The notes beneath the pieces were generated by a model, which was not told where the DNA came from, did not search any database, and was given only the letters and a program-made list of their open reading frames with translations. Made by a program: the position numbers and the translations under genes. From the sequence record LR756504.1: a stretch of DNA of 64,000 nucleotides; one strand, 5' to 3'. Below, piece by piece: positions 2,824 to 61,218 of this stretch; position 1 is the stretch's first letter, and the number at the start of each line of letters is the position of its first letter.

Positions 2824-4377
2824 TCATGTTTTATATATGAAATTTATATTTCCAGAATCATAAATCCTAAATATCTTTCTTTCTAACATTATCTCTTTTT
2901 CTGTTTTATTTGTATCGTACCCACTTTTAATTAGAATGCTTTTTCTATATTTAGATTTATTTTCTTTTTTATGATTAAGTACATAGTAATAATCAGGTTT
3001 TGTATTTGATATAAATTTAAAATTTAACTTTTCGTATAGTTTACCTATACTCCAATTTCTATCTACGCTTGTTATTATTTTTGATGGGTTATATCTTTTC
3101 AAAAAATAGTTAAATAATTTTGACGCACCACCAATTACAGTATAGTTTAATTTACTACAAAAATAAATCATTTTATACATATTAGCATCATTTTTTATAT
3201 TTTTAAATGTCATTACTGTTGTTAACTCATCATTATAATATAAAGCAATATTTATTTTAGAACATGTATATCCTTGTAAATTATTATTTTCTAAAAACAA
3301 TTTACTTTCTTTATTATTAATTTCTTTTATTTCACATTTTCTAGCATAAATTTTATTTGGTGTTTTCCCTAATAAATTTAATATCATAGATTTTACTATA
3401 TCTTTTTTAAAAAGCCAATCATCTTCGTAAATATGAATTAATTGTATATTATTTCTTAAACAATCCTCTGTTTTATTTAGATGATAGTCATTATTTTTAT
3501 CTAATTCACAATGCCAATATAGTCCATTAATTTCAAATGCAATATTTAAATCAGGTAGATAAATATCCAACTCTTTCCCTTTTAAAATTTTTCTATTAGA
3601 TTTTATAATATTTAAAGTATAATATTTTTTTATAAAAATTATAATTTCGTTTTCAATACCAGATAAATTACTAAATTTTGGATAACAATTTGTACATACC
3701 TCAATGTTACTTTTAATTCTATTATAAAATAGACCCATTGTAATAGTAAAGTCACTATTACAAATTAAATGATGTAATTTAATTTTTTGATAATTTTTAT
3801 ACAGTATCTTGTAATTTATTAAATAATTTTCATTTTTATTTAAAAATACATTCGTACTATTTCTCAATGATGAATGATTTTCAACACCATATTTTTCTAA
3901 ATTAGTGATTTTTATTTTATTTTTTATGTTGTTATCTTGCACACCATATTCAACACCATATTTTTCTAAATTAGTGGTTTTTATTTTATTTTTTATATCA
4001 TTATTACTTAATGGATGTCCACCCCAATTTTTAATGAATGTGTCTTTTCTTTTTTCTTGAAATTTTTTTATATTAGATGGATTTATTTCGCCATATTTAC
4101 TATATAAAGTTTTTTTAGATTTTATAATGTTACATTTTGAACAAACATATGATTTATCACCATTATTTATGCTGTTAAAATATGATGCGTATGAAACATA
4201 TGTTAAATTTTCACAATTAGAACATTTGCAATTTACTTTTATTTTACTATAAGGTTTTAAATGATGTGGTAACACATCTATCATATCGCCAGATTTTTCG
4301 AATACATAATTTAAATTTTTCCAATATTTACATGTTTTATTATGTACAACAACTTTAATAAATTCATCTATAATCAT
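2824..4377 (-). mobile_element. Free-standing putative homing endonuclease (Zn-ribbon, TNLEKYGVE repeats, PD-(D/E)xK/Vsr-like nuclease, C-terminal accessory domain)
   Basis: CxCxxC and CxxC motifs, repeated KTNLEKYGVE, ELDIYLPDLNIAFEINGLYWH core; 17 bp downstream of the helicase gene. Confidence 0.7.
3880..3996. repeat. Imperfect ~48-bp direct repeat with 69-bp period encoding KIKxTNLEKYGVE
   Basis: TTCAACACCATATTTTTCTAAATTAGTGxTTTTTATTTTATTTTTTAT at about 3880-3927 and 3949-3996. Confidence 0.8.
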
Positions 4378-4394
4378 TTAAATATAATATTTTT

Positions 4395-5738
4395 TTAATC
4401 AAATCTCTTATCATTTATTATAGCAAGATATTTAATATCTAATTCAAAATGCGTTCTTTCCCATTTGAATCCACCATCTCGCATTTTTAATAGTTTGAGA
4501 ATGTATTTATTTTCTTTTCTCATAGCATCGGTTCTAATAATTCCAAGTACTAAATCCGAAGTTTCAACTATTGCCTTACTTTCAGAAATATCTTGTAAAG
4601 TTATATCACCTGCACCAAAATTATCCTTACCAACTTGCATTGCAGTTACCATTGCTAAGTCGTATTTTTGTGCAATTGCTCTTAAACCTTCTGATAATTG
4701 TTTACCATTACTGAAAAGATTACCTTGTTTATTATCAGGACACATAATAGTAAGATAATCAACAATTACCATATCAATTTTAATACCCTTTTTATCTTGT
4801 AGCATTTTAATATGATTATCTACATCAGATATAGTAGCAGAACCAGCAGGGAATTCTTTCACGAAGAATTTACCCATTGGATTTTCAAATAAACTAGAAT
4901 CCTTTGTAAATTGAGCATTTCTACTTCTACGCTCTTTTATTTTAGATTCAATATACTTTATATCTTTACTTCTATGATCATATTCTTCTATAGGAATTTT
5001 TAAACTAATTGCACCATATCTCTTCATTACTTTTCTATCAGACATTTCAAGAGATACATAAAGAACGTTCTTACCATAATTAGTAGCATTAACAGCTATA
5101 TTTGATAACCATAATGATTTACCTGAGTTAGATGGACCAATTATGATAGAAAGTGTTTTTAAATCAAATCCACCCGATGTTAATTCATCTAATGTTTTCC
5201 AACCAGTAGGAATTTTATTCTTTAGAGTATCTTGTATGTGTGATTTAGGATCATCAAAATCTAACCCTAAATTTTCATCATCAAAATTTAATAACATTGA
5301 ATTACCAAATAATTCTTTCAACTTTGATGCTGCTAATTCAACGTTATCGTAATCAGCAGGATTTAAATTTCTAACATAGTCAACAGCTTCTTGCATTCTT
5401 GATCGAATGTTAGTTGTAGTAGACCATGATTGAATATTTTTTCTCAACCATTCATCATCTTTCCCTTGTTGATATTGAGATAGATCAACAGCTAGTAATG
5501 TTTGTAAATAATCATCTGAAATTTTTCCATGTGGATCATCAATTCTAACTATTTGTCTAATCATTTGTGGTGTAGGCACAATAGGTTTTTTAGAACCAAT
5601 AAAATGATTTCTTATTCTCTGATAAACGAATTGTATTTGTGCATTCTTAAATGCTATTGGTTCTACTCTATGAAAGTAGGATGGATTATCTAAAATGTAG
5701 TTAAAAAAAATTGGTTCTAATGTCTCTAAGTTTTGCAT
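4395..5738 (-). CDS. dnaB: Replicative DNA helicase, T4 gp41/DnaB family
   Basis: IPTGWKTLD, Walker A GPSNSGKS, YVSLEM, IVDYL, AMQV, KMRDG. Confidence 0.92.
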   Translation of the reverse strand: MQNLETLEPIFFNYILDNPSYFHRVEPIAFKNAQIQFVYQRIRNHFIGSKKPIVPTPQMIRQIVRIDDPHGKISDDYLQTLLAVDLSQYQQGKDDEWLRKNIQSWSTTTNIRSRMQEAVDYVRNLNPADYDNVELAASKLKELFGNSMLLNFDDENLGLDFDDPKSHIQDTLKNKIPTGWKTLDELTSGGFDLKTLSIIIGPSNSGKSLWLSNIAVNATNYGKNVLYVSLEMSDRKVMKRYGAISLKIPIEEYDHRSKDIKYIESKIKERRSRNAQFTKDSSLFENPMGKFFVKEFPAGSATISDVDNHIKMLQDKKGIKIDMVIVDYLTIMCPDNKQGNLFSNGKQLSEGLRAIAQKYDLAMVTAMQVGKDNFGAGDITLQDISESKAIVETSDLVLGIIRTDAMRKENKYILKLLKMRDGGFKWERTHFELDIKYLAIINDKRFD

Positions 5739-26784: not shown

Positions 26785-28002
26785 ATGAAAAATGATATGA
26801 ATCAAATTGTAGTTGTAAAGCGAAACGGTAAAAAAGAGTCAGTTAAGCTTGAAAAAATTCTACACAGAATTGACAAAGAAAGTTATGGATTGAATTCTCA
26901 ATGGATTCAACCAATGGAAATAGCAAAAAAAGTAATAGCGGGTATTTATAGTGGTGTAACTACTAAAGAACTAGATAAATTGAGCATCGAGACTGCTGCA
27001 TCATTAACAACTAAACACCCAGATTATTCTACACTTGCTGCAAGATTAGCAATCACAACTTTACACAAGGACACTAAAAGATATTTTTCTGAATGTGTAG
27101 AAGACTTATATAATTTTATTAATAAGGAAACTAATAGACATGCGCCTTTAGTAAGTGAAGAATTTTATAATATCGTTAAAGAAAATGCTGACGAATTAGA
27201 TTCTGCTATTGTTGCGTCTCGCGATTTCATGTTTGATTATTTCGGATACAAAACATTAGAAAAATCATACTTATTAAAAATTGATGATGCTGTAGCAGAA
27301 AGACCTCAATATTTATTTATGAGAACGGCATTAGGTATTCACGGTAGAGATATTGAATCTGTATTAAAAACTTATGATTTGATTTCACAGGGGTATTTTA
27401 CGCATGCTACACCAACATTATTTAATGCTGGTACAACAAGACCCCAACTTTCGAGTTGTTTTCTTTTAAAATTACATTCTGATTCAATTGAAGGAATTTT
27501 TGAAACAATTAAAGATACTGCATTAATTTCCAAAAATGCTGGTGGTATAGGCATTGCCATCTCAAATGTTAGAGCGGCTGGTTCTTATATCACTGGTACT
27601 AACGGACGCTCTAACGGATTAATACCATTCTTGAAAATATTTGACTCATGTGCTAGGGCGGTTGATCAGTGTTTTTTAGAAGGTACTAAAATTGTAACTA
27701 ATAAAGGTTTAGTAGAAATTAACAATCTTAAAGAAGGTGATTTAGTTCTTACATCCGATGGGAAATTTAATCCAGTTGAAACTAAATTGTCATTTACAAA
27801 AGAAACAGCTAGGATAGTTAAAATTAAAACTGCTAAAGGTGAACAAGAAGTAACTGAAGAGCATAATATATTAGTTATCCAAAATATAGAAAAAGATTTA
27901 GATAAAGAAACAATTAAAAAAAGAATATTAACTGGACTTTATCCAATAGAATGGAAGAAAGCAAAAGATTTAGTTATAACAGATAGAATATTAAAATATT
28001 AA
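26785..28002 (+). CDS. nrdA: RNR class Ia alpha subunit, N-terminal fragment fused to N-half of a split intein
   Basis: ATP-cone (VVKRNG), ERPQY, THATPTLFNAG, LSSCFLL, AGGIG, ...AVDQ then intein block A CFLEGT. Confidence 0.93.
   Translation: MKNDMNQIVVVKRNGKKESVKLEKILHRIDKESYGLNSQWIQPMEIAKKVIAGIYSGVTTKELDKLSIETAASLTTKHPDYSTLAARLAITTLHKDTKRYFSECVEDLYNFINKETNRHAPLVSEEFYNIVKENADELDSAIVASRDFMFDYFGYKTLEKSYLLKIDDAVAERPQYLFMRTALGIHGRDIESVLKTYDLISQGYFTHATPTLFNAGTTRPQLSSCFLLKLHSDSIEGIFETIKDTALISKNAGGIGIAISNVRAAGSYITGTNGRSNGLIPFLKIFDSCARAVDQCFLEGTKIVTNKGLVEINNLKEGDLVLTSDGKFNPVETKLSFTKETARIVKIKTAKGEQEVTEEHNILVIQNIEKDLDKETIKKRILTGLYPIEWKKAKDLVITDRILKY
27670..27999 (+). mobile_element. Split intein, N-half (110 aa)
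   Basis: Starts CFLEGTKIVT; block B VTEEHNIL; ends at stop 28000-28002. Confidence 0.88.
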
Positions 28003-28067
28003 AATTTATTTTTAATATTTAAAGTAATTAGTCCATAAGGATTAATTAAAAATTATTGAAATTAAAT

Positions 28068-28979
28068 ATGTCAAAAATAATCACAACAGAAGATTTTATA
28101 TTAAATGCTAAACAAAAACATAACGATATTTACGACTATTCTTTAGTAGTTTATAAAAATGCTAAAGAAAAAATAAAAATTATATGTAAAATACATAATG
28201 AAATATTTACACAAACACCAAATTCACATCTACGTGGAAGTGGATGTCACTTATGTGGAAGAAAAAAAGTAGAGGATTCTATGCGATTATCAAATGAAAT
28301 ATTTATAGAAAAAGCTATATTAATACACGGATTAAAATATAACTATGACGAAATAAATTATATTGATTATTATACTAAGATTAAAATAAAATGTTCTTTA
28401 CATGGTGAATTTTTTCAACAACCTAGGAAACATTTATATGGTAATGGTTGTAAAAAATGTTGTGGTTTAATAAATAATTTTATAGATTTATGTAAAGAAA
28501 AATTTTCAGAATATAACTTTGATTATACAATTACTAAATATGAAGGTATGCGAAATAAAATCAAAGTAAATTGTTTAAAACATGGAATATTCGAAAAAAC
28601 GGCATCCAAATTCTACCACAGTAATCAAATATGTCCGAAGTGTGTCAATAGAACAATATCAAAATCTGAACATGATTGGTTAGATGATTTAAAAATACCA
28701 CAAATAAATAGAAATTATTATTTATTAATAGGTGATAAAACATATTGTTTAGATGGTATTGATTTAAAAAATAAAATTATATACGAATTTAATGGTGACT
28801 TTTTTCATGGTAATCCATCAAAATATAAAAATGATGATATAAACCCATTACTTAAAGAAACATTTGGTGAATTATATAAAAAAACTTTAGAAAAAGAAAA
28901 ATATATTTTGGAAAACAGCGATTTTAAAGTGGTATCTATATGGGAGAGTGAATATTTAAAAAGTAAAAATAAAAAATAG
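28068..28979 (+). mobile_element. Free-standing Vsr-like/PD-(D/E)xK homing endonuclease between the intein halves
   Basis: Three YDYS..Y...KIKIxCxxHG-type Zn repeats, LDGIDLKNKIIYEFNGDFFHG, VSIWESE; ATG at 28068 (track starts at TTG 28056). Confidence 0.85.
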
Positions 28980-28987
28980 AAATAAAT

Positions 28988-29182
28988 ATGAGTAAAGAAC
29001 AAATTGAAAGTGGAATGGAGTATATAGAATCTCCAGAAGAATTAAATTTAAATTTTGATTTAATTGATTTTGAGGAAATAGAAAGTGTTTCTATTGAAGA
29101 AGTTGAAAATGTAAAAGTATATGATTTAGAAATAAAAAATAATCATACGTATCAAGTTGATGGGCTAGGATTAGTTCATAAC
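28988..29182 (+). mobile_element. Split intein, C-half (65 aa)
   Basis: Own ATG; block F VYDLEIKNNHTY, block G LVHN; followed by GGG. Confidence 0.88.
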
Positions 29183-31079
29183 GGTGGTGGTAAACTGTAA
29201 TTGCTTCCACATAAAAAAATTCTGTGAACTGCTGGAAAATCCTTTAAGTTTCTAATACTACAAAGTAATCTGTGAAGATAAACTTGAATGTTTAAAAAAT
29301 TAGAAAATTGGACAATCAGCATCCAAGCTTCTTAGAAATAAGAAGAAGGTTCAACGACTACTAAAAGTAATCTAAGTTTTAAATAATATGATGAAATTGG
29401 CACGAGTGCAGAACAGTCTAAAAAACTGAAGATATAGTCTGAACTTATAAGAAATTATAAGAAATTAGGATAAAGAACCTAATGATAACAAACTGAAAAG
29501 AAAAGGTAGTTTTGCTGTATATTTAGAACCTTGGCACGGTGACATCATGGATTTTCTCGATTTAAAGAAAAACCATGGTAAAGAAGAAATGCGAGCAAGA
29601 GATTTATTTTATGCTATATGGATGTGTGATCTTTTTTTACAAAGAGTGGAAAAAGATTTAGATTGGTCATTAATGTGTCCTAATCAATCACCAGGTTTGG
29701 ATGATGTATACGCTGAAGAATTTGTTAAATTGTATGAACAATATGAAGCTGATGGTAAATTTTTGAGAAAAGTTAAAGCCAGAGATGTTTGGCACAAGAT
29801 ACTTGAAGCGCAAATGGAAACTGGTACACCATATATTTTATATAAAGATTCGTGTAATGCTAAATCAAATCAAAAAAATGCTGGAATTTTGAAGACATCA
29901 AATCTTTGTGCTGAAATATTAGAAGTAGTATCTGGTGAAGAAGACATAGATCCAGAAACTGGTGTGGCTGGACAAACTGCTGTTTGTAATTTAGCATCTA
30001 TTTGTTTGCCAAAATTTGTAAAAGGTAAAAAGAATTTCAAATTTGATTTCGAAAAATTACATGATGTAGCTTACCAAGCTATTGTAAATTTGAATAAAGT
30101 AATTGATGTTAATTATTACCCAACAGAGAGAGCGAAAAGATCAAATACTAAAATGAGACCTGTTGGTCTCGGCACACAGGGTATGGCGGATGTTTTTTTC
30201 TTAATGAATTTAGAATTTACATCACCAGAATCTAAAAAATTAAATATAGAAATATACGAAACAATATATCACGCAGCATTACAAGCCTCTTGTGATATAG
30301 CTAAAAAAGAAGGTACATACACAATGTTTGAAGGTTCACCAGCTTCTAAAGGTATATTACAATTTGATATGTGGAATGTTGTACCATCAAACAGATATAA
30401 TTGGTATGAATTGAAAGAAGAAATTAAAAAATATGGTTTGAGAAACTCATTAACCACATGTAGTATGCCTACGGCATCAACGGCATCAATTTTCGGAAAC
30501 GAAGCTTCACAAGAAGTTCAAAGTAGCAATATGTATACACGTAAAGTTCTTTCAGGCGAATTCATTATAGTAAATAAACATTTAGTTAAAAAATTGTGCG
30601 AATTGAATTTATGGTCTGATGAAATGAGACAACAAATTATTGTTAATAATGGATCTATTCAAAACATTACTTCAATACCTAAAGAAATTAGAGATATTTA
30701 CAAAACTGTTTGGGAAACTTCTCAAAAAGATGTCATAGATATGTATGCTAATCGAGGCTCTTTTATCGATCAAACACAATCTATGAATATATTTATGGCT
30801 AATCCTAATTATGCCAAATTAACATCAATGCATTTCTATGGATGGGGTGGTGGAGTAACAAAAAGTTCACTGGATGAAAAATACGGAGCAACACCAGAAA
30901 AAGCATTAAAAACTGGTATTTACTATTTAAGAAGTCAGGCTGCTGCTGATGCAATCAAATTTACAATAGATCCCAATATGGTTAAAAGTGTAAAGGTTGA
31001 TGGGAAAGAATATGATGCGAATGAACAAATGAGTTGTTCAATTGATAATCCTGATGATTGCATTGCATGCGGCTCGTAA
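28988..31079 (+). CDS. nrdA: IntC + RNR alpha C-terminal fragment (exons 28988-29191 and 29496-31079)
   Basis: KRKGSFAVYLEPWHGDI, TSNLCAEI, AVCNLASI, MPTAST, DQTQSMN, YYLRS, C-terminal CSIDNPDDCIACGS. Confidence 0.93.
29192..29495 (+). ncRNA. Group I intron (304 nt, no ORF) in nrdA C-terminal gene
   Basis: P GAACTGCTGGAAA (29226), Q AATCAGCA (29314), R GTTCAACGACTA (29349), S AAGATATAGTC (29429); P1 exon GUGGUGGU pairs with GCUUCCAC ending in U-G; terminal G; removal restores HN-GGG-KRKGSFAVYLEPWH in frame. Confidence 0.93.
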
Positions 31080-55764: not shown

Positions 55765-56609
55765 GATTTTTAAAAAACTTATTCAAAAGAAATCCAAATA
55801 GATTTAAGAAAACTAAATGGGATGATTTAATTGCTGATAATCCATTCTCTAAAAAGAATAAAAATAGTGCAAATTCTTATTCAAATAGCATACCTAAATC
55901 AGTGCTTCAAATTATAGGAATAAACGTAGCAGTATTTTTACTATTATGGATTTGTGAAATTGCTTTACCTATGACATGGTATCAAATGATTGTTAAAATG
56001 CTTGCTGTTCCTACAGATATAGAAATATTATATAAACCTTGGACTGTAATAACATCAGCATTTACGCATTTATCTTTTGGTCATATATTAGGAAATATGT
56101 TAGCTATATTTTTCATAGCACCTTATTTCAAAATGGCATTCATAGATAAACAAATATGGAATTTATATTTATTGGGACATTTTGTAGGGATATTCTTTTC
56201 AATAGGAATTAATATTCTTATATTTGATGATCACGGGATGGCTTTAGGTGCATCGTGTGGTGTGTCAGCATTAGTAGCTGGTGTATGTTTTAAATTTCCA
56301 CAAATGCCAGTGAATATATTTTTTATTAACACAACACTTAAATGGTTAATTGCTATTTATGTAATACAATCAATATTCATGTTATTCTCACCTAATATGG
56401 TTGGTGGTATTGGACATTTATTTGGAATGTTATTAGGTGTATTGTATGTTCATTTATTAACAAAAAATATAGAAATAGGAAAAATATTTGATTCAATTAC
56501 TAAATTAAAAATTAAAAAAACAGGTAAAGGTATTAAATACGTTTCAATGTATAGTGAAAAATCAGAAAATTCAATTAAAAATATAATTAACAAAAACTTC
56601 AAAAAATAA
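55761..56609 (+). CDS. Rhomboid family intramembrane serine protease
   Basis: PWTVITSAFTH, HILGNM, GASCG, GHLFG; multiple TM. Confidence 0.88.
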   Translation: MRFLKNLFKRNPNRFKKTKWDDLIADNPFSKKNKNSANSYSNSIPKSVLQIIGINVAVFLLLWICEIALPMTWYQMIVKMLAVPTDIEILYKPWTVITSAFTHLSFGHILGNMLAIFFIAPYFKMAFIDKQIWNLYLLGHFVGIFFSIGINILIFDDHGMALGASCGVSALVAGVCFKFPQMPVNIFFINTTLKWLIAIYVIQSIFMLFSPNMVGGIGHLFGMLLGVLYVHLLTKNIEIGKIFDSITKLKIKKTGKGIKYVSMYSEKSENSIKNIINKNFKK

Positions 56610-57676
56610 TGAGCGAGATTAAAGAATTGTTTTTAAAACTTACGGAATATACTATACCATTCGGAAAAGAAGAATCATTAGAGCCTATTTTACCAACTGG
56701 ATTTAAAAGAGATAAAATAGGAAACTATTATTATGAAATAGGCGAATCTGAAACTCTTTTTACAACACATTTAGATACTTATTCAGATAAGTATGAAAAA
56801 GTTGTTCATAAATTTTATAAAAAGGATGGTACACCTTGCGAAAAAGACGAAGCTGATATTATTGCCACTGATGGAAAAACTATTTTAGGTGGCGATAATA
56901 AAGCGGGTTGTACTATTTTAATCAATATGATTAATAATAAAATTCCAGGCGTTTACTATTTTTTTTTAGGAGAAGAACCGATTTTATCGGGGGGCGTTTG
57001 GGGAAGTACACAAGCATTAAAAGCAAATCCAGAATACTTTAAAAGATTTAAAAGAGCTATTGCATTTGATAGAAGAGAAATGGGATCAGTTATTACTCGT
57101 CAAATGGCTAGAAACTGTTGTTCTACAGAATTTACAGATGCAATTATAAAAGAATTAGCTGGACAAGGATTGTCATTTAAAAAGGATCCAACGGGATATT
57201 ATACTGACAGTGGTGTTTTTATGGATGTAATACCAGAAGTAACAAATCTATCAGCAGGTGTGTGGAATGAACACTCACCCAAAGAATTTTGCTCTATAAA
57301 ATATCTCGAAAAAGTAGCCGAGGCGGCTTTACATGTTAATTGGGAATCATTACCTGTTGTTAGAAAAGCATTTAAAAATGTACCAATTAAAAAAGGAAAC
57401 TTTGTAACAAAATTTGTAGATGTTAAAAAAACAAAGAAAACATTCAACATTATAAATAATTTTCTTGAAATGTATGGATATTTATGTATTAATGTAGAAG
57501 ATTATGAACCTGAACACGAAATGGTTTTCTCACAATGGCATAATGAATCTGAAATTATAATAAAATTTAAAGACGATTCTGTTATTTACGAAGATCAAGA
57601 AATACCAGTAAAAGATTTTATTTTGATGTTAGATCCAGAAGCAGACTTAGAAGAAATATTTAATCCTGAAAAATAG
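56609..57676 (+). CDS. M20/M28-like zinc peptidase (copy 2)
   Basis: TTHLDT, GGDNKAG, GEE, DRRE, YTDS, NEHS. Confidence 0.8.
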   Translation: MSEIKELFLKLTEYTIPFGKEESLEPILPTGFKRDKIGNYYYEIGESETLFTTHLDTYSDKYEKVVHKFYKKDGTPCEKDEADIIATDGKTILGGDNKAGCTILINMINNKIPGVYYFFLGEEPILSGGVWGSTQALKANPEYFKRFKRAIAFDRREMGSVITRQMARNCCSTEFTDAIIKELAGQGLSFKKDPTGYYTDSGVFMDVIPEVTNLSAGVWNEHSPKEFCSIKYLEKVAEAALHVNWESLPVVRKAFKNVPIKKGNFVTKFVDVKKTKKTFNIINNFLEMYGYLCINVEDYEPEHEMVFSQWHNESEIIIKFKDDSVIYEDQEIPVKDFILMLDPEADLEEIFNPEK

Positions 57677-57677
57677 T

Positions 57678-57737
57678 ATGAAAATTTTAAAAGAAAAAGA
57701 ATCTTCTGCTGGTATTAATCCAAATGAATTAGAATAA
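57678..57737 (+). CDS. 19-aa mini-ORF MKILKEKESSAGINPNELE duplicating part of the 57763 ORF
   Basis: ATG 1 nt after the peptidase stop; carries the inverted-repeat copy in frame. Confidence 0.4.
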   Translation: MKILKEKESSAGINPNELE

Positions 57738-57927
57738 AAAAAAGGGCTTAAAGCCCTTTTTTTTATTCATCAAAATCTCTTGCCCTACTCAATACACCAT
57801 CAATAGACTTTGCTAAATCTACGGGTATTTGATGTCCTCTACAGCGTTCTAATAAATGTCTCATATCAGAAGCAACACCTAGTAATTCTATTAATTCATT
57901 TGGATTAATACCAGCAGAAGATTCTTT
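57696..57927. repeat. Perfect 36-bp inverted repeat (57696-57731 / 57892-57927)
   Basis: AAAGAATCTTCTGCTGGTATTAATCCAAATGAATTA on + strand and its exact reverse complement 160 bp downstream. Confidence 0.95.
57736..57764. terminator. Bidirectional intrinsic terminator
   Basis: AAAAAAAAGGGCT-TAA-AGCCCTTTTTTTT. Confidence 0.85.
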
Positions 57928-57990
57928 AAGTTCTTTATGAAGTCTTGCATTTTCTAACTTTAAATATTCTAACTCATAATTTTTATCCAT
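57763..57990 (-). CDS. Hypothetical 75-aa protein
   Basis: Coiled-coil N-terminus; contains KESSAGINPNEL. Confidence 0.55.
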   Translation of the reverse strand: MDKNYELEYLKLENARLHKELKESSAGINPNELIELLGVASDMRHLLERCRGHQIPVDLAKSIDGVLSRARDFDE

Positions 57991-58008: not shown

Positions 58009-58560
58009 TTACAATAATATAAAAAAAAGTACTATGGCTAATGTAACAACATTAGTACCAATTAGAGTTTTTACTGTACCATTTTTTCTTTTTATCTTTC
58101 CTTCTTGTTTTTGAATAATTTCATCTTTTTTTGTACTTATTTCTTCGTATTTAGCAATAGTTTTTTTATCATTTGATAAAATCTGTTCATCATTCTTTAT
58201 AATTTCATTAGCTTTAGCATTTTCTAATATTAAAGAATCGGTAATATTTTTACATTGTTTATCTTTTTCTTCCATTATTATAATTTTTGTGCTAAGTGCA
58301 TCAACTTTTTCCGCATCAATCAAACCTTTTTCAAGACATTTTGCTATTTCTTTAGCTTTACCAGTTTCCCAAATCCAATAAGTTTTACCTGTTATAGAAT
58401 CTTTAACTACTTTATCTGGTGTAATATCTTCAACGATTGGTGTTTGTGTGTCTTGGACAATATTATTTGTTGTGTTTTCTACGCTGTTCGTAGTCTGCGA
58501 AAAACTGATGTAGCTGCTTGTCATTAAAATTAGTAATATTATCAATTTTTTCATATTCAT
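58009..58560 (-). CDS. Secreted/anchored coiled-coil protein (signal peptide plus C-terminal TM)
   Basis: MKKLIILLILMTSSYISFSQ; TLIGTNVVTLAIVLFFILL. Confidence 0.6.
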   Translation of the reverse strand: MNMKKLIILLILMTSSYISFSQTTNSVENTTNNIVQDTQTPIVEDITPDKVVKDSITGKTYWIWETGKAKEIAKCLEKGLIDAEKVDALSTKIIIMEEKDKQCKNITDSLILENAKANEIIKNDEQILSNDKKTIAKYEEISTKKDEIIQKQEGKIKRKNGTVKTLIGTNVVTLAIVLFFILL

Positions 58561-58873
58561 TATTTATTTTTTCTAAAATATCATTTTGCTTTTTAATTTC
58601 TTCATTGAGACTATCCATTTTTTGTTGCATTATTGGAATTCTTTTTTCTATAGCTTCTTTATCTCTTTTAAGGATTTGATTTTGTCCTTCAAATTTATTA
58701 TTAGCATCTTTTAATACTTGAATTTCAGTTTCTTTTTTATTAATATACTTATATCCCTTTTTAAGAAAACCATTAATTGGTAATGATGGAACTAAACATG
58801 TTAGAAACACACCAAAAAAGAAACATACCATATATTTCCAATACTTCTTTATAAAATTTGTTAAAAATAACAT
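58463..58873 (-). CDS. N-anchored coiled-coil membrane protein (i-spanin-like architecture)
   Basis: YMVCFFFGVFLTCLVPSL then long coiled coil; overlaps downstream ORF by 98 nt. Confidence 0.5.
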   Translation of the reverse strand: MLFLTNFIKKYWKYMVCFFFGVFLTCLVPSLPINGFLKKGYKYINKKETEIQVLKDANNKFEGQNQILKRDKEAIEKRIPIMQQKMDSLNEEIKKQNDILEKINNEYEKIDNITNFNDKQLHQFFADYEQRRKHNK

Positions 58874-59232: not shown

Positions 59233-59646
59233 TTAGTTCATATAAGGAAAGAAGAATTTACTCTCGATACTAGCATTTTCATCAGAATCAGATCCGTGTA
59301 CAGCATTAGCTTCCATACTTTTTGCAAATAGATTTCTAATAGTACCTGGTTCAGCATTAGCTGGATTTGTTGCACCAACTAATTTACGATAATCAGCGAC
59401 AGCATTTTCTTTTTCGAGTACAAATACTACAATATTTCCACTTGACATATAATTAGTTAAATCATTGTAAAATGGTCTTTCTTTGTGAACTTCGTAGAAT
59501 TTACCAGCATCTTCAATAGTAAGATTTGTCATTTTCAAATCTACTATTTTAAAACCTTCATTCTCTATCATTTTTAGTATTGCATCAACGTGTCCATCTT
59601 TTACTGCATCTGGCTTAATCATTGAAAATGTTCTATTTGTCTCCAT
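59233..59646 (-). CDS. ndk: Nucleoside diphosphate kinase
   Basis: [37 protein letters not shown]. Confidence 0.96.
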
Positions 59647-59703
59647 ATTTTTTATTTTTGTATCGTCTATAAGCTATAATACAGCTTATTATTATAAGTG
59701 TTA

Positions 59704-61218
59704 TCATATATCAAATTTTATTCCTTGAGATAATGGTAATTCTTTACTGTAATTTATAGTATTTGTTTGTCTTCTCATATATACTCTCCAAGCATCCGAA
59801 CCAGATTCAAATCCACCACCAGTTTCCTTATGTCCACCAAATGCGCCACCAATTTCTGCACCAGATGTTCCAATATTAATATTTGCTATACCACAATCAG
59901 AACCCCAAGCAGATAGAAACATTTCAGATTCTCTAATATCTGTTGTAAATAATGATGATGATAATCCTTGTTTTACATCATTTTGAATTTCAATAGCATT
60001 AGTAATATCACCTTTATATTTCATTAAATATAGTATTGGCACAAATGTTTCTTTTTGTACAATATCATAACGATTTTCTGCTTCAACTATTGCTGGATAA
60101 ACATAATTCTCATAAAGATGTCTTCCACCAACAATTAATCTACCACCTTCGTGTTCAACTTTAAATATAGCATCTTTAAAAGAATTGACAGCATCCATAT
60201 CAATTAATGGTCCTACTAATGTATCTTCTTTTAGAGGATTACCAATTCTTATATTTTTATATACTTCTACTAACTTCGATTTAACTTCTGAATACACATC
60301 TTCGTGTACAATCAACCTTCTTGTTGTTGTGCATCTTTGCCCAGCAGTGCCAACTGCGCTAAAAGCCACCGCTCTAATTGCTAAATCTAAATCAGCTTTA
60401 TTAGAGATAATAATAGCATTATTACCACCCAATTCTAAAATTGTTTTACCAAATCTATCAGCAACAGCTTTACTAACAATTCCACCCATTCTCGTAGAAC
60501 CTGTAGCAGACACTAACGCAATTCTTCTATCATTAGCAATTAAAGAACCTATTGTAGCATCACCATTAACTAATGAAAATATACCTTCTGGTAATTTATT
60601 TTTTACCAATACTTGTTTTATAATATTTTGACAAGCAATGGCGGTTAAAGGAGTTTTTTCACTTGGCTTCCATACACATACATTACCACAAACGGCAGCT
60701 ATCATAGCATTCCAAGCCCATACAGCAACAGGGAAATTAAATGCTGAAATAATACCAACTATACCAAGTGGATGCCACTGTTCATATATTCTATGCTCAG
60801 GACGTTCGGAATGCATAGTCAATCCATATAATTGTCTAGATAAACCGACAGCAAAATCACATAAGTCAATCATCTCTTGTACTTCACCTAAACCCTCTTG
60901 AAGAATTTTGCCCATTTCTAAAGAAACTAACATACCCAAAGCTTCCTTATTCTTCCTTAATTCATCACCAATTTGGCGAACAATTTCACCTCTCTTAGGT
61001 GCTGGTATAGTTCTCCATATTTTGAATGCTTTCTCAGCTTCTTGTATAACTCTTTCGTAATGACTTTCATTTGCCATACATACAGATGCTATAACTTCAT
61101 TATTAATGGGAGATTTAATAACTTTTTCGTTATCCGAATACTCATGTATTAAACCTGTACTTGAACATGGATTTACTTTAGCTATTTCTAATTGATTTAA
61201 AACTTCTTTTATTACCAT
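59704..61218 (-). CDS. Aldehyde dehydrogenase family 7 (alpha-aminoadipic semialdehyde dehydrogenase-like)
   Basis: EGLGEVQEMID, SAFNFPVAVW, ATGSTRMG, LELGGNNA, GQRCTT, FGGHKETG. Confidence 0.92.
   Translation of the reverse strand: MVIKEVLNQLEIAKVNPCSSTGLIHEYSDNEKVIKSPINNEVIASVCMANESHYERVIQEAEKAFKIWRTIPAPKRGEIVRQIGDELRKNKEALGMLVSLEMGKILQEGLGEVQEMIDLCDFAVGLSRQLYGLTMHSERPEHRIYEQWHPLGIVGIISAFNFPVAVWAWNAMIAAVCGNVCVWKPSEKTPLTAIACQNIIKQVLVKNKLPEGIFSLVNGDATIGSLIANDRRIALVSATGSTRMGGIVSKAVADRFGKTILELGGNNAIIISNKADLDLAIRAVAFSAVGTAGQRCTTTRRLIVHEDVYSEVKSKLVEVYKNIRIGNPLKEDTLVGPLIDMDAVNSFKDAIFKVEHEGGRLIVGGRHLYENYVYPAIVEAENRYDIVQKETFVPILYLMKYKGDITNAIEIQNDVKQGLSSSLFTTDIRESEMFLSAWGSDCGIANINIGTSGAEIGGAFGGHKETGGGFESGSDAWRVYMRRQTNTINYSKELPLSQGIKFDI

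What the first reader, a model, noticed from the sequence alone, without database searches (positions are those of the whole stretch)
57678..57990. Perfect 36-bp inverted repeat, in frame in two convergent ORFs: a potential invertible domain-swap switch
Seen: 57696-57731 and 57892-57927 are exact reverse complements, each encoding KESSAGINPNEL on codon boundaries, one in a 19-aa plus-strand mini-ORF right after the peptidase, the other in the 75-aa minus-strand ORF. The 160 bp between hold the 42-aa C-terminal part and a symmetric bidirectional terminator. Inverting it would give a 60-aa plus-strand protein (MKILKE-repeat-C-domain) and a 34-aa minus-strand stub, moving the C-domain to a different operon while keeping termination intact. 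Inference: a shufflon-like phase switch, or the scar of a recent template-switch duplication. No site-specific recombinase is seen in this window; UvsX could act on 36 bp.
Basis: partly seen in the sequence, partly recalled or inferred. Interest (0 to 1): 0.68.

Follow-up and report, generated by a model that had tools for sequence, protein, structure and literature searches.

The report
Deletion scar with inverted copied filler
The perfect 36-base inverted repeat is real, but it is most likely the scar of a recent deletion in a huge phage genome, in which a small gene was lost and the gap was patched with a short inverted copy of the neighbouring gene; it does not look like a built-in genetic switch.

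Summary
Window 57696-57731 and 57892-57927 are exact reverse complements with 160 nt between them. This is the only spaced inverted repeat longer than 17 nt in the 348-kb record.

The window belongs to an AT-rich megaphage and is identical to GenBank LR756504.1 (636 kb).

The 75-aa minus-strand gene is real and has four relatives at 69-88% identity. The 19-aa "mini-ORF" is not a gene of its own. In the closest relative (L009, about 84% DNA identity) a 111-aa gene starting MKFLKEKEL sits at this spot after the peptidase. The window keeps only its first 8 codons (MKILKEKE) and its last ~16 nt.

The 296 nt between were replaced by a 20-nt filler (57702-57721), an exact inverted copy of 57902-57921. 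The filler is flanked by microhomologies: AAAGAA on the left and AAATGA(ATTA) on the right. It matches the window's own allele at all 8 positions where L009 differs, so the event is recent. No relative has the repeat.

No invertase was found. The one serine recombinase is an IS607 transposase 241 kb away. The 75-aa protein models as a single three-helix bundle that inversion would cut.

Orientation mixtures could not be tested, because only k=31 contigs were available.

Verdict: a microhomology-mediated template-switch scar, of low interest.

The parts
56609..57676 (+). 355-aa peptidase gene, the last full gene of the plus-strand gene row. It is conserved next to the 75-aa gene in relatives.
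   Evidence: PHROG 4191 'peptidase', E 3.8e-51. Weak PepT-like NCBIfam hits, below the cut-off. Syntenic 355/344-aa genes in L009, L010 and L012.
57678..57737 (+). 19-aa 'mini-ORF'. It is the remnant of a lost 111-aa accessory gene: the first 8 codons (57678-57701) and the last ~16 nt (57722-57737) are homologous to the L009 gene, and the middle is filler.
   Evidence: The L009 gene at 4254-4589(-) begins MKFLKEKEL directly after the peptidase stop. A second family member, P0007, also begins MKFLKEKEL. BLAST homology with L009 breaks at window 57701 and 57722.
57696..57731 (+). Left arm of the inverted repeat. This is the derived copy.
   Evidence: Exact reverse complement of 57892-57927. Absent from the same position in L009, L010 and L012.
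57702..57721 (+). Unambiguous templated filler (20 nt), an inverted copy of 57902-57921. It replaces 296 nt of the ancestral gene (L009 4270-4565).
   Evidence: BLAST breakpoints, alignments. It matches the window's own allele of the source.
57732..57768 (.). Perfect 18+1+18 palindrome, read as a bidirectional intrinsic terminator shared by the two convergent gene rows. It is ancestral and not part of the copied filler.
   Evidence: A nearly identical palindrome (GAATAAAAAAAGGGCTT / AAGCCCTTTTTTTATTC) is in L010, which has no repeat. A similar one is in L009.
57763..57990 (-). Conserved 75-aa gene of unknown function, predicted to be a single three-helix bundle. It is the last gene of the minus-strand row (aldehyde dehydrogenase, NDK, 99-aa, 136-aa, 183-aa and 75-aa genes).
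   Evidence: Four relatives at 69-88% identity with an invariant N-terminal KNYELEYLKLEN. AlphaFold model with pLDDT 80.2, helices 3-26, 30-49 and 57-74. No Pfam, PHROG or NCBIfam match. Only generic helical bundles in the PDB.
57892..57927 (-). Right arm of the inverted repeat. This is the native source sequence, residues 22-33 of the 75-aa protein (end of helix 1, loop, start of helix 2), the most variable stretch of the protein.
   Evidence: The homologous stretch sits at the same position in all relatives. It differs from the L009 homologue at 8 of 36 positions.

Best explanation
The inverted repeat is a mutational scar, not a device.

The ancestor of this megaphage carried a 111-aa accessory gene between the peptidase gene and the shared terminator, as the closest relative L009 still does. 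In the window's lineage, after its split from L009, about 296 nt of that gene were lost in one event. The junction was bridged by a short stretch of DNA synthesis that used the neighbouring convergent 75-aa gene, some 200-500 nt away, as template on the opposite strand.

Shown:
- The deletion.
- The 20-nt exact inverted filler.
- The recency of the event.
- The absence of the repeat from relatives.
- The 6-nt identity (AAAGAA) at the left junction and the 6-10-nt identity (AAATGA, perhaps plus ATTA) at the right junction, between the source and the sequence that flanked the deletion.

Inferred mechanism: a microhomology-primed template switch, by one of two routes.
(a) Snap-back synthesis at a resected double-strand break. 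The minus-strand 3' end ...TCATTT folds back onto AAATGA in its own strand, copies about 30 nt up to ...TTCTTT, then anneals to ...AAAGAA on the other end.
(b) A stalled nascent plus strand ending ...AAAGAA jumps to TTCTTT on the other template strand, copies leftwards, and returns at AAATGA.

The two routes cannot be told apart from the sequence.

The 19-aa ORF is a by-product. Its reading frame is kept because both microhomologies are common in-frame codon pairs of this AT-rich genome (AAA GAA; AAT GA). As a side effect the 36-nt repeat may now allow rare RecA/UvsX-type inversion. It would also form a 36-bp stem in any read-through RNA. Nothing indicates that either has been selected.
For: (1) The closest relative, L009, has a 111-aa gene exactly where the mini-ORF lies, with the same start context (TAATATGAAATTTTTAAAAGAAAAGGAA in L009, TAGTATGAAAATTTTAAAAGAAAAAGAA in the window).

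(2) The family is real and its N-terminus is native. P0007 (54% identity, different genomic context) also starts MKFLKEKEL and ends NEVL. No other copy is in the window's genome.

(3) BLAST of L009 against the window gives two collinear matches that stop at window 57701 and 57722, corresponding to L009 4566 and 4269. So 296 nt are replaced by 20 nt.

(4) Those 20 nt plus both flanks are the exact reverse complement of the window's own 75-aa gene. That stretch is native to the 75-aa gene, because all relatives have it there.

(5) The copy agrees with the window's allele at all 8 of 36 positions where L009 differs. The two genomes differ by about 16% overall. The event is therefore younger than the split, and no substitution has followed it.

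(6) L009, L010, L012 and L022 have no such repeat.

(7) No quasi-repeat existed beforehand in L009. The local alignment score is reached by 336 of 2000 shuffles.

(8) The pattern (inverted repeat made of insertion plus flanking microhomology on both sides, with a deletion) is the signature described for snap-back synthesis-dependent MMEJ (PMC2943611, read).

(9) A second small gene nearby is also reduced to an N-terminal stub in the window relative to L009: 24 aa against 100 aa. Loss of small accessory genes is therefore ongoing in this region.
Against: - The ancestral sequence is inferred from a relative with only about 84% DNA identity, so the exact breakpoints and microhomology lengths are uncertain, especially on the right (57722-57737).
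- L010 and L012 lack the 111-aa gene altogether, so its history of gain and loss rests on L009 plus the 8-codon remnant.
- Snap-back and end-joining repair of this type has been characterised mainly in eukaryotes. Which enzymes would do it in a megaphage-infected Bacteroidota cell is unknown.
- Read-level data that could show a second orientation were not available, so current function as an inversion substrate is not excluded.
Confidence: 0.8

Rival explanations
1. Programmed or selected invertible switch. Recombination between the 36-nt arms flips 57732-57891, turning the conserved 75-aa gene off (34-aa stub) and producing a 60-aa fusion driven by the peptidase gene row. The recombinase would be either the phage RecA/UvsX-like protein or an unrecognised one.
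For: - The arms are perfect and in frame, and the terminator in the spacer is symmetric, so both orientations would be terminated.
- A RecA/UvsX-like gene is present.
- Orientation in reads could not be tested, and the k=31 graph is compatible with either orientation.
Against: - No relative has the repeat.
- The left arm is filler at a deletion junction inside a gene remnant.
- No invertase was found. The only serine recombinase is an IS607-family transposase with an N-terminal HTH, 241 kb away. There is no tyrosine recombinase above the cut-off and no large serine recombinase in the 636-kb genome.
- The arm has no dyad symmetry of the hix/gix kind.
- Only two copies exist.
- Inversion would cut a single three-helix bundle and remove its invariant N-terminal helix.
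- All four assembled records show one orientation.
- From my own knowledge, 36 bp is near or below the length at which T4-type or RecA recombination becomes efficient.
Confidence: 0.05
2. Selected nucleic-acid structure. The two arms would act together as a long-range 36-bp RNA stem in read-through transcripts (for example an RNase III site controlling the 75-aa gene's mRNA), or as a pair of protein-binding operators flanking the terminator.
For: The minus-strand RNA 57995-57670 folds with the 36-bp stem enclosing the C-terminal coding half and the terminator: MFE -104.3 kcal/mol, z = -11.1 against shuffles.
Against: - The fold follows trivially from a perfect repeat.
- The stem needs read-through of a strong 17-18-pair terminator.
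- There is no conservation or covariation to test, because no relative has the second arm.
- There is no Rfam match in this region.
Confidence: 0.04
3. Assembly artefact: a chimeric or misjoined contig created the second arm or the orientation of the inner segment.
For: De Bruijn graphs with k below 36 cannot orient the inner 160 nt. Logan contigs break exactly at the arms.
Against: - The arm unitig has twice the depth of the flanks (37.8 against 18.4 and 19.3), so two copies exist in the reads.
- Four records (G000, IMGVR_UViG_3300012582_000194, LR756504.1, WNFQ01000001.1) agree base for base.
- A 636-kb genome, matching LR756504.1 in length, is among those reported as manually curated to completion (PMC7162821).
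- The assembled orientation gives a 75-aa gene collinear with four relatives.
Confidence: 0.02
4. Gene conversion between older, diverged inverted repeats. The N-terminus of the 111-aa gene and the middle of the 75-aa gene would already have been similar, and were homogenised before a separate simple deletion.
For: By eye, L009 KEKELIGLTKEDL faintly resembles KELKELETGIKPNEL.
Against: The DNA similarity in L009 is no better than chance: the score is reached by 336 of 2000 shuffles. The repeat finder reports no inverted repeat there. This reading needs two events where one suffices.
Confidence: 0.04

Closest known systems
Snap-back synthesis-dependent microhomology-mediated end joining (SD-MMEJ; Pol theta-type templated insertions), as described by Yu & McVey 2010 (PMC2943611) and Khodaverdian et al. 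2017 (PMC5728401)
   Same: A deletion joined through a short insertion that is an inverted copy of nearby sequence. The repeated motif consists of the insertion plus flanking bases on both sides (primer repeat and microhomology repeat). The template lies close by on the same molecule.
   Different: - Here the filler is 20-30 nt and the template is about 170-470 nt away, larger and further than the few-base events typical of those assays.
- The system is a phage replicating in a bacterium, where no Pol theta is known.
- The enzymes are unidentified, and the break itself is inferred, not observed.
Replication template switching (FoSTeS/MMBIR-type fork switching; quasipalindrome template-switch mutagenesis of T4 and E. 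coli).
   Same: A nascent strand leaves its template, primes on a few complementary bases on the opposite strand, copies a short stretch in inverted orientation and returns. This gives a deletion plus an inverted duplication with microhomology at both joints.
   Different: Classical quasipalindrome events perfect an imperfect palindrome that already exists. No such quasi-repeat existed here. FoSTeS/MMBIR was defined in human and yeast genomes.
Site-specific DNA inversion switches (Hin/Gin/Cin/Pin serine invertases; shufflons with Rci; fimbrial-type tyrosine switches)
   Same: Two inverted repeats flank a short segment that carries the 3' part of a coding sequence, so inversion would exchange C-terminal coding parts, as in the phage Mu G segment or shufflons.
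   Different: - No invertase is present.
- There are only two repeat copies.
- The repeats lack dyad symmetry.
- The repeat is not conserved in relatives.
- One 'alternative N-terminus' is an 8-codon gene remnant.
- The exchanged part is not a separate domain.

Membership tests
Templated-insertion deletion scar (SD-MMEJ / template switch) | The inserted bases are an exact direct or inverted copy of nearby sequence. | tested here: met
   57702-57721 is the exact reverse complement of 57902-57921, 180 nt away.
Templated-insertion deletion scar (SD-MMEJ / template switch) | The repeat extends beyond the net insertion into the flanks on both sides (microhomology at both junctions). | tested here: met
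   The arm is 36 nt and the net insertion is 20 nt. On the left, AAAGAA (57696-57701) is shared with the ancestral gene start (AAGGAA in L009). On the right, AAATGA (57722-57727) is identical in L009, and the next 4 nt are uncertain. The ancestor is inferred from an 84%-identical relative.
Templated-insertion deletion scar (SD-MMEJ / template switch) | Ancestral sequence is lost at the junction. | tested here: met
   L009 4270-4565 (296 nt of the 111-aa gene) has no counterpart in the window. No copy of the gene lies elsewhere in the genome.
Templated-insertion deletion scar (SD-MMEJ / template switch) | The state is derived and lineage-specific, absent from relatives. | tested here: met
   No inverted repeat in L009, L010, L012 or L022. 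The copy carries the window-specific allele at 8 of 8 diagnostic sites.
Templated-insertion deletion scar (SD-MMEJ / template switch) | A polymerase or helicase able to carry out microhomology-primed synthesis has been identified. | not tested
   The phage encodes replication and recombination proteins (DnaB-like helicase, RecA/UvsX-like protein). No test links any enzyme to the event.
Serine-invertase switch (Hin/Gin/Cin/Pin) | An invertase gene (N-terminal catalytic domain, C-terminal HTH) lies next to or near the invertible segment. | tested here: not met
   The only Resolvase-domain gene in the 348-kb and 636-kb records is 241 kb away. It has an N-terminal HTH and scores 174 bits on NF033518, IS607-family transposase (cut-off 110).
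Serine-invertase switch (Hin/Gin/Cin/Pin) | Crossover sites of about 26 bp with two inversely oriented half-sites (internal dyad symmetry). | tested here: not met
   The best internal dyad in the 36-nt arm is 6 of 8 pairs, and longer ones are 50% or less.
Serine-invertase switch (Hin/Gin/Cin/Pin) | Both orientations are present in a population. | not testable with these tools
   Only Logan k=31 contigs were available. They break at the arms and fit either orientation. All four assemblies show one orientation.
Shufflon | An Rci-type tyrosine recombinase is present. | tested here: not met
   PF00589 has no match above the cut-off in either record. The single 14.9-bit match contains 6 stops.
Shufflon | Several (more than two) repeat copies delimit multiple invertible segments with alternative C-terminal exons. 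| tested here: not met
   There are exactly two copies in the genome. There is one segment and no alternative full-length C-terminal cassette.
Quasipalindrome template-switch mutation | A pre-existing imperfect palindrome is made more perfect. | tested here: not met
   The corresponding L009 sequences are no more similar than shuffled controls (336 of 2000 reach the score). No inverted repeat is reported there.

The most novel reading that the evidence does not exclude
The scar has been co-opted. The 36-nt perfect repeat would serve as a substrate for recombinase-independent (RecA/UvsX-type) inversion in a megaphage. This would give a heritable on/off toggle of the conserved 75-aa three-helix protein, with a 60-aa N-terminally swapped variant expressed from the peptidase gene row. 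It would be a phase switch born from a repair accident, without a dedicated invertase.
Probability: 0.05. Interest if true: 0.6.

Novelty: new member of a known kind. Interest (0 to 1): 0.2.

Why it matters
As a scar, it is a clean natural example of how short-range, microhomology-primed template switching removes small accessory genes from a 636-kb phage genome. It also shows how such events leave behind in-frame mini-ORFs and perfect inverted repeats that look like engineered switches.

This is a useful caution for genome scans: a perfect, in-frame inverted repeat with a neat predicted inversion product need not be a device, and comparison with a close relative resolves it.

It also documents gene flux in this region of a Mahaphage-type genome: the 111-aa gene and a 100-aa membrane gene are both reduced to N-terminal stubs. 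Beyond that it changes no open question.

Tried and rejected
- Reads. The look-up of sequencing runs gave one full holder (X1, a soil metagenome, possibly the source sample) and one marginal holder (X2), both held only as Logan k=31 contigs. Read laying shows contigs breaking at the arms and the arm at 2x depth, with no joints. Orientation mixtures cannot be judged from this.
- Searches for the 36-mer in viral contigs and metagenome contigs returned only other records of the same genome, in the same orientation.
- I did not search for the hypothetical inverted junction or the 60-aa product. The protein look-up accepts only sequences the window encodes, and assembled contigs carry only the majority form.
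- Function of the 75-aa and 111-aa proteins. There is no Pfam, PHROG or NCBIfam match. The AlphaFold model of the 75-aa protein (pLDDT 80) matched only generic three-helix bundles in the PDB, with best E 0.9. No function is assigned.
- Invertase search. Resolvase, Phage_integrase and Recombinase Pfam families were searched in both the 348-kb and 636-kb records. Only an IS607 transposase was found.
- A pre-existing quasi-palindrome in L009 and dyad symmetry within the arm were both tested, and both were negative.
- I considered whether 'GAATAA' before the terminator belongs to the copied tract. I rejected this because L010, which has no repeat, has the same GAATAAAAAAAGGGCTT terminator arm.
- I considered the nearby T5orf172-domain gene as a source of the break. 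It is conserved in L009 and L010 at the same place, so there is no specific link.
- The large representative-protein search was not used, because the word search already found relatives.

Full report
**1. The observation**

Reading the sequence and the repeat finder confirm a 36-nt inverted repeat. The arms are 57696-57731 and 57892-57927, 100% complementary, with 160 nt between them.

The left arm lies in a 19-aa plus-strand ORF (57678-57737, MKILKEKESSAGINPNELE*) that begins 2 nt after the stop of a 355-aa gene. The right arm encodes residues 22-33 of a 75-aa minus-strand ORF (57763-57990). Both arms read KESSAGINPNEL in frame.

The spacer holds the last 42 codons of the 75-aa ORF and a perfect 18+1+18 palindrome (57732-57768) with a G+C core between A8 and T8 runs. 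The scan calls this palindrome terminator-like.

I scanned the whole 347,857-bp record for exact inverted repeats within 5 kb. This is the only spaced one with arms longer than 17 nt. All other long ones are hairpin palindromes of the terminator type. At 26% G+C the chance expectation for such a repeat is about 1e-9 (my estimate).

**2. What the genome is**

The window is G000:C1:31662-95661 of a 348-kb virus record. It encodes the following:
- a DnaB-like helicase
- split topoisomerase II / gyrase-like subunits
- ribonucleotide reductase
- an RNase R-like protein
- NusG, NDK and a rhomboid protease
- a RecA/UvsX-like protein
- tRNAs

So it is a very large phage.

The 75-aa protein's exact sequence is also on GenBank LR756504.1 (636,363 bp, "uncultured phage") and WNFQ01000001.1 (636,443 bp). 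Both are 100% identical to the window over the 6.2 and 5.7 kb fetched. An IMG/VR contig of 267,884 bp is also identical.

LR756504 is cited among published megaphages (PMC9723777). A 636-kb genome is one of the four largest manually curated, circularised genomes of Al-Shayeb et al. 2020. It belongs to the Mahaphage clade, with Bacteroidetes predicted as host (PMC7162821). That LR756504.1 is this genome is my inference from the length. All four records show the same orientation of the inner segment, but they are probably not independent of one another.

**3. The 75-aa gene is real; the mini-ORF is not a gene of its own**

The word search found four relatives of the 75-aa protein at 88, 79, 69 and 73% identity. 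Their alignment shows an invariant N-terminal KNYELEYLKLEN and a conserved C-terminal half. The stretch covered by the arm (residues 22-29 above all) is the most variable part.

An AlphaFold model from this alignment (pLDDT 80.2) is a single three-helix bundle with helices 3-26, 30-49 and 57-74. The arm therefore covers the end of helix 1, the loop and the start of helix 2.

The contigs encoding the relatives were fetched. In L010 and L012 the peptidase gene and the 75-aa gene converge directly on the shared palindromic terminator. In L009, the closest relative (83-86% DNA identity), a 111-aa gene lies between them on the peptidase strand. It starts 1 nt after the peptidase stop with MKFLKEKELIGL... 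and ends at the terminator.

A second member of this small family, P0007 (54% identity, on an 85-kb contig in a different neighbourhood), also starts MKFLKEKEL and ends NEVL. The window's MKILKEKE is therefore the N-terminal remnant of this gene. The genome holds no other copy.

**4. Anatomy of the scar**

BLAST of L009 against the window gives two collinear matches that end at window 57701 (= L009 4566) and 57722 (= L009 4269). Between them L009 has 296 nt and the window has 20 nt (57702-57721). These 20 nt are the exact reverse complement of 57902-57921 inside the window's own 75-aa gene.

The identity between copy and source runs on into both flanks:
- Left: AAAGAA (57696-57701), which is also the ancestral KE codon pair of the lost gene (AAGGAA in L009).
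- Right: AAATGA (57722-57727), identical in L009's last codons (…TTA AAT GAG ATA TTA TAA), perhaps extended by ATTA.

The sequence GAATAAAAAAAAGGGCTT that follows is the ancestral terminator arm. L010, which has no repeat, carries the same palindrome.

The source stretch differs from its L009 homologue at 8 of 36 positions, and the copy agrees with the window's allele at all of them. So the event happened in the window's lineage after the split from L009, and no substitution has occurred since. No relative has an inverted repeat at this place. L009 shows no prior similarity between the two sites: the alignment score is reached by 336 of 2000 shuffles.

**5. Mechanism**

What is shown is a ~296-nt deletion joined through an inverted, locally templated filler with microhomology at both joints. 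Yu & McVey describe this signature for snap-back synthesis-dependent MMEJ: an inverted repeat made of the net insertion plus flanking sequence on both sides (PMC2943611; see also PMC5728401). From my own knowledge it also fits replication-fork template switching (FoSTeS/MMBIR) and Ripley-type strand switching.

Two concrete routes fit the sequence.
(a) After a break in the 111-aa gene and resection, the right end's minus-strand 3' tail (…TCATTT-3') folds back on AAATGA about 170 nt further along the same strand. It is extended by about 30 nt to …TTCTTT-3', unfolds, and pairs with the left end's …AAAGAA-3'.
(b) A stalled nascent plus strand ending …AAAGAA-3' pairs with TTCTTT (57922-57927) on the other template strand. 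It copies leftwards to 57892 and returns to its own template at AAATGA.

I cannot choose between the two routes.

The in-frame property follows from the microhomologies being frequent in-frame codon pairs. AAAGAA occurs 733 times in the genome, against 85 expected for a random hexamer.

**6. The switch reading**

I searched both the 348-kb and 636-kb records for recombinases.
- The single Resolvase-domain gene (G000:330623-330985) has an N-terminal HTH. It is followed by an overlapping 475-aa ORF and scores 174 bits on the IS607-family transposase model (cut-off 110). It lies 241 kb from the repeat.
- There is no tyrosine recombinase above the cut-off and no large serine recombinase.
- The arm has no internal dyad symmetry, and only two copies exist.
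- Inversion would strip the 75-aa protein of its invariant first helix.

A RecA/UvsX-like protein is present, so rare homologous inversion across 36 bp is conceivable. From my own knowledge 36 bp is near the lower limit for such recombination, and nothing suggests selection for it.

Read-level evidence could not be obtained. The only runs are kept as Logan k=31 contigs, which break at the arms. The arm forms a separate 36-nt unitig at depth 37.8, twice the flanks, and a k=31 graph is compatible with either orientation of the inner 220-nt unitig. This does confirm that the duplication is present in the reads.

**7. Other readings**

A read-through RNA would form the 36-bp stem. That is a trivial consequence of the repeat. 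It would require passage through a strong terminator, and it has no comparative support. There is no Rfam family in this region. An assembly artefact is excluded by the depth doubling and by the collinearity of the 75-aa gene with its relatives.

**8. Verdict**

The interpretation as an invertible domain-swap switch is not supported.

It is a new instance of a known kind of mutation in an unusual genome. Interest is low (0.2). The residual novel reading, a scar co-opted as a recombinase-free phase switch, has a probability of about 0.05.

Noticed in passing
whole record G000 (window = G000:C1:31662-95661): The 347,857-bp IMG/VR record is flagged 'inverted terminal repeats' and 100% complete. 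It appears to be only about 55% of a 636-kb circular megaphage genome (GenBank LR756504.1 / WNFQ01000001.1). Three matched positions fit G000 x = LR756504 x + 378,399 mod 636,363. The completeness and ITR labels are therefore doubtful.
   Followed up: partly
window 26785-31079 (+): The ribonucleotide reductase large subunit is interrupted. ORF 26785-28002 has ATP-cone, RNR_lgN and barrel positions 1-72, then a Hint (intein) domain. ORF 28056-28979 (307 aa) has no Pfam match. ORF 29547-31079 resumes the barrel at profile position 92. This looks like an intein or another insertion, possibly degraded or split.
   Followed up: partly
window 59633-59707 (-): A 24-aa ORF ([24 protein letters not shown]) between the aldehyde dehydrogenase and NDK genes shares its start with a 100-aa membrane-protein gene at the same place in L009 (2017-2319). 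This is a second small gene reduced to an N-terminal stub in the window's lineage, here without obvious templated filler.
   Followed up: partly
G000:C1:330458-332453 (locus L016 1336-3331), outside the window: An IS607-family serine transposase (195 aa, N-terminal HTH, NF033518 at 174 bits) is followed by an overlapping 475-aa ORF with no Pfam or NCBIfam match. The second ORF is possibly a divergent TnpB-like partner.
   Followed up: partly
G000:C1:106529-106588 and 99422-99498, outside the window: A 60-nt perfect palindrome (30-nt arms, no loop), and a 34-nt inverted repeat with a 9-nt loop. These are the longest hairpin-type repeats of the record.
   Followed up: no
L022 2390-2734 (IMGVR_UViG_3300042261_000762): A distant homologue (39% identity) of the 75-aa protein carries a ~37-aa basic N-terminal extension (114-aa ORF). 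It sits in a different gene neighbourhood, not convergent with a peptidase.
   Followed up: no
window 51031-51104 and 51176-51250 (-): Two tRNA genes above the Rfam gathering score.
   Followed up: no
window 58009-58873 (-): The 183-aa and 136-aa ORFs upstream of the 75-aa gene are coiled-coil proteins with hydrophobic ends. The L012 homologue of the 136-aa ORF has a weak DivIC match. As listed by the ORF listing they overlap by 98 nt, and gene calls on LR756504.1 choose a later start for the downstream one (171 aa).
   Followed up: no
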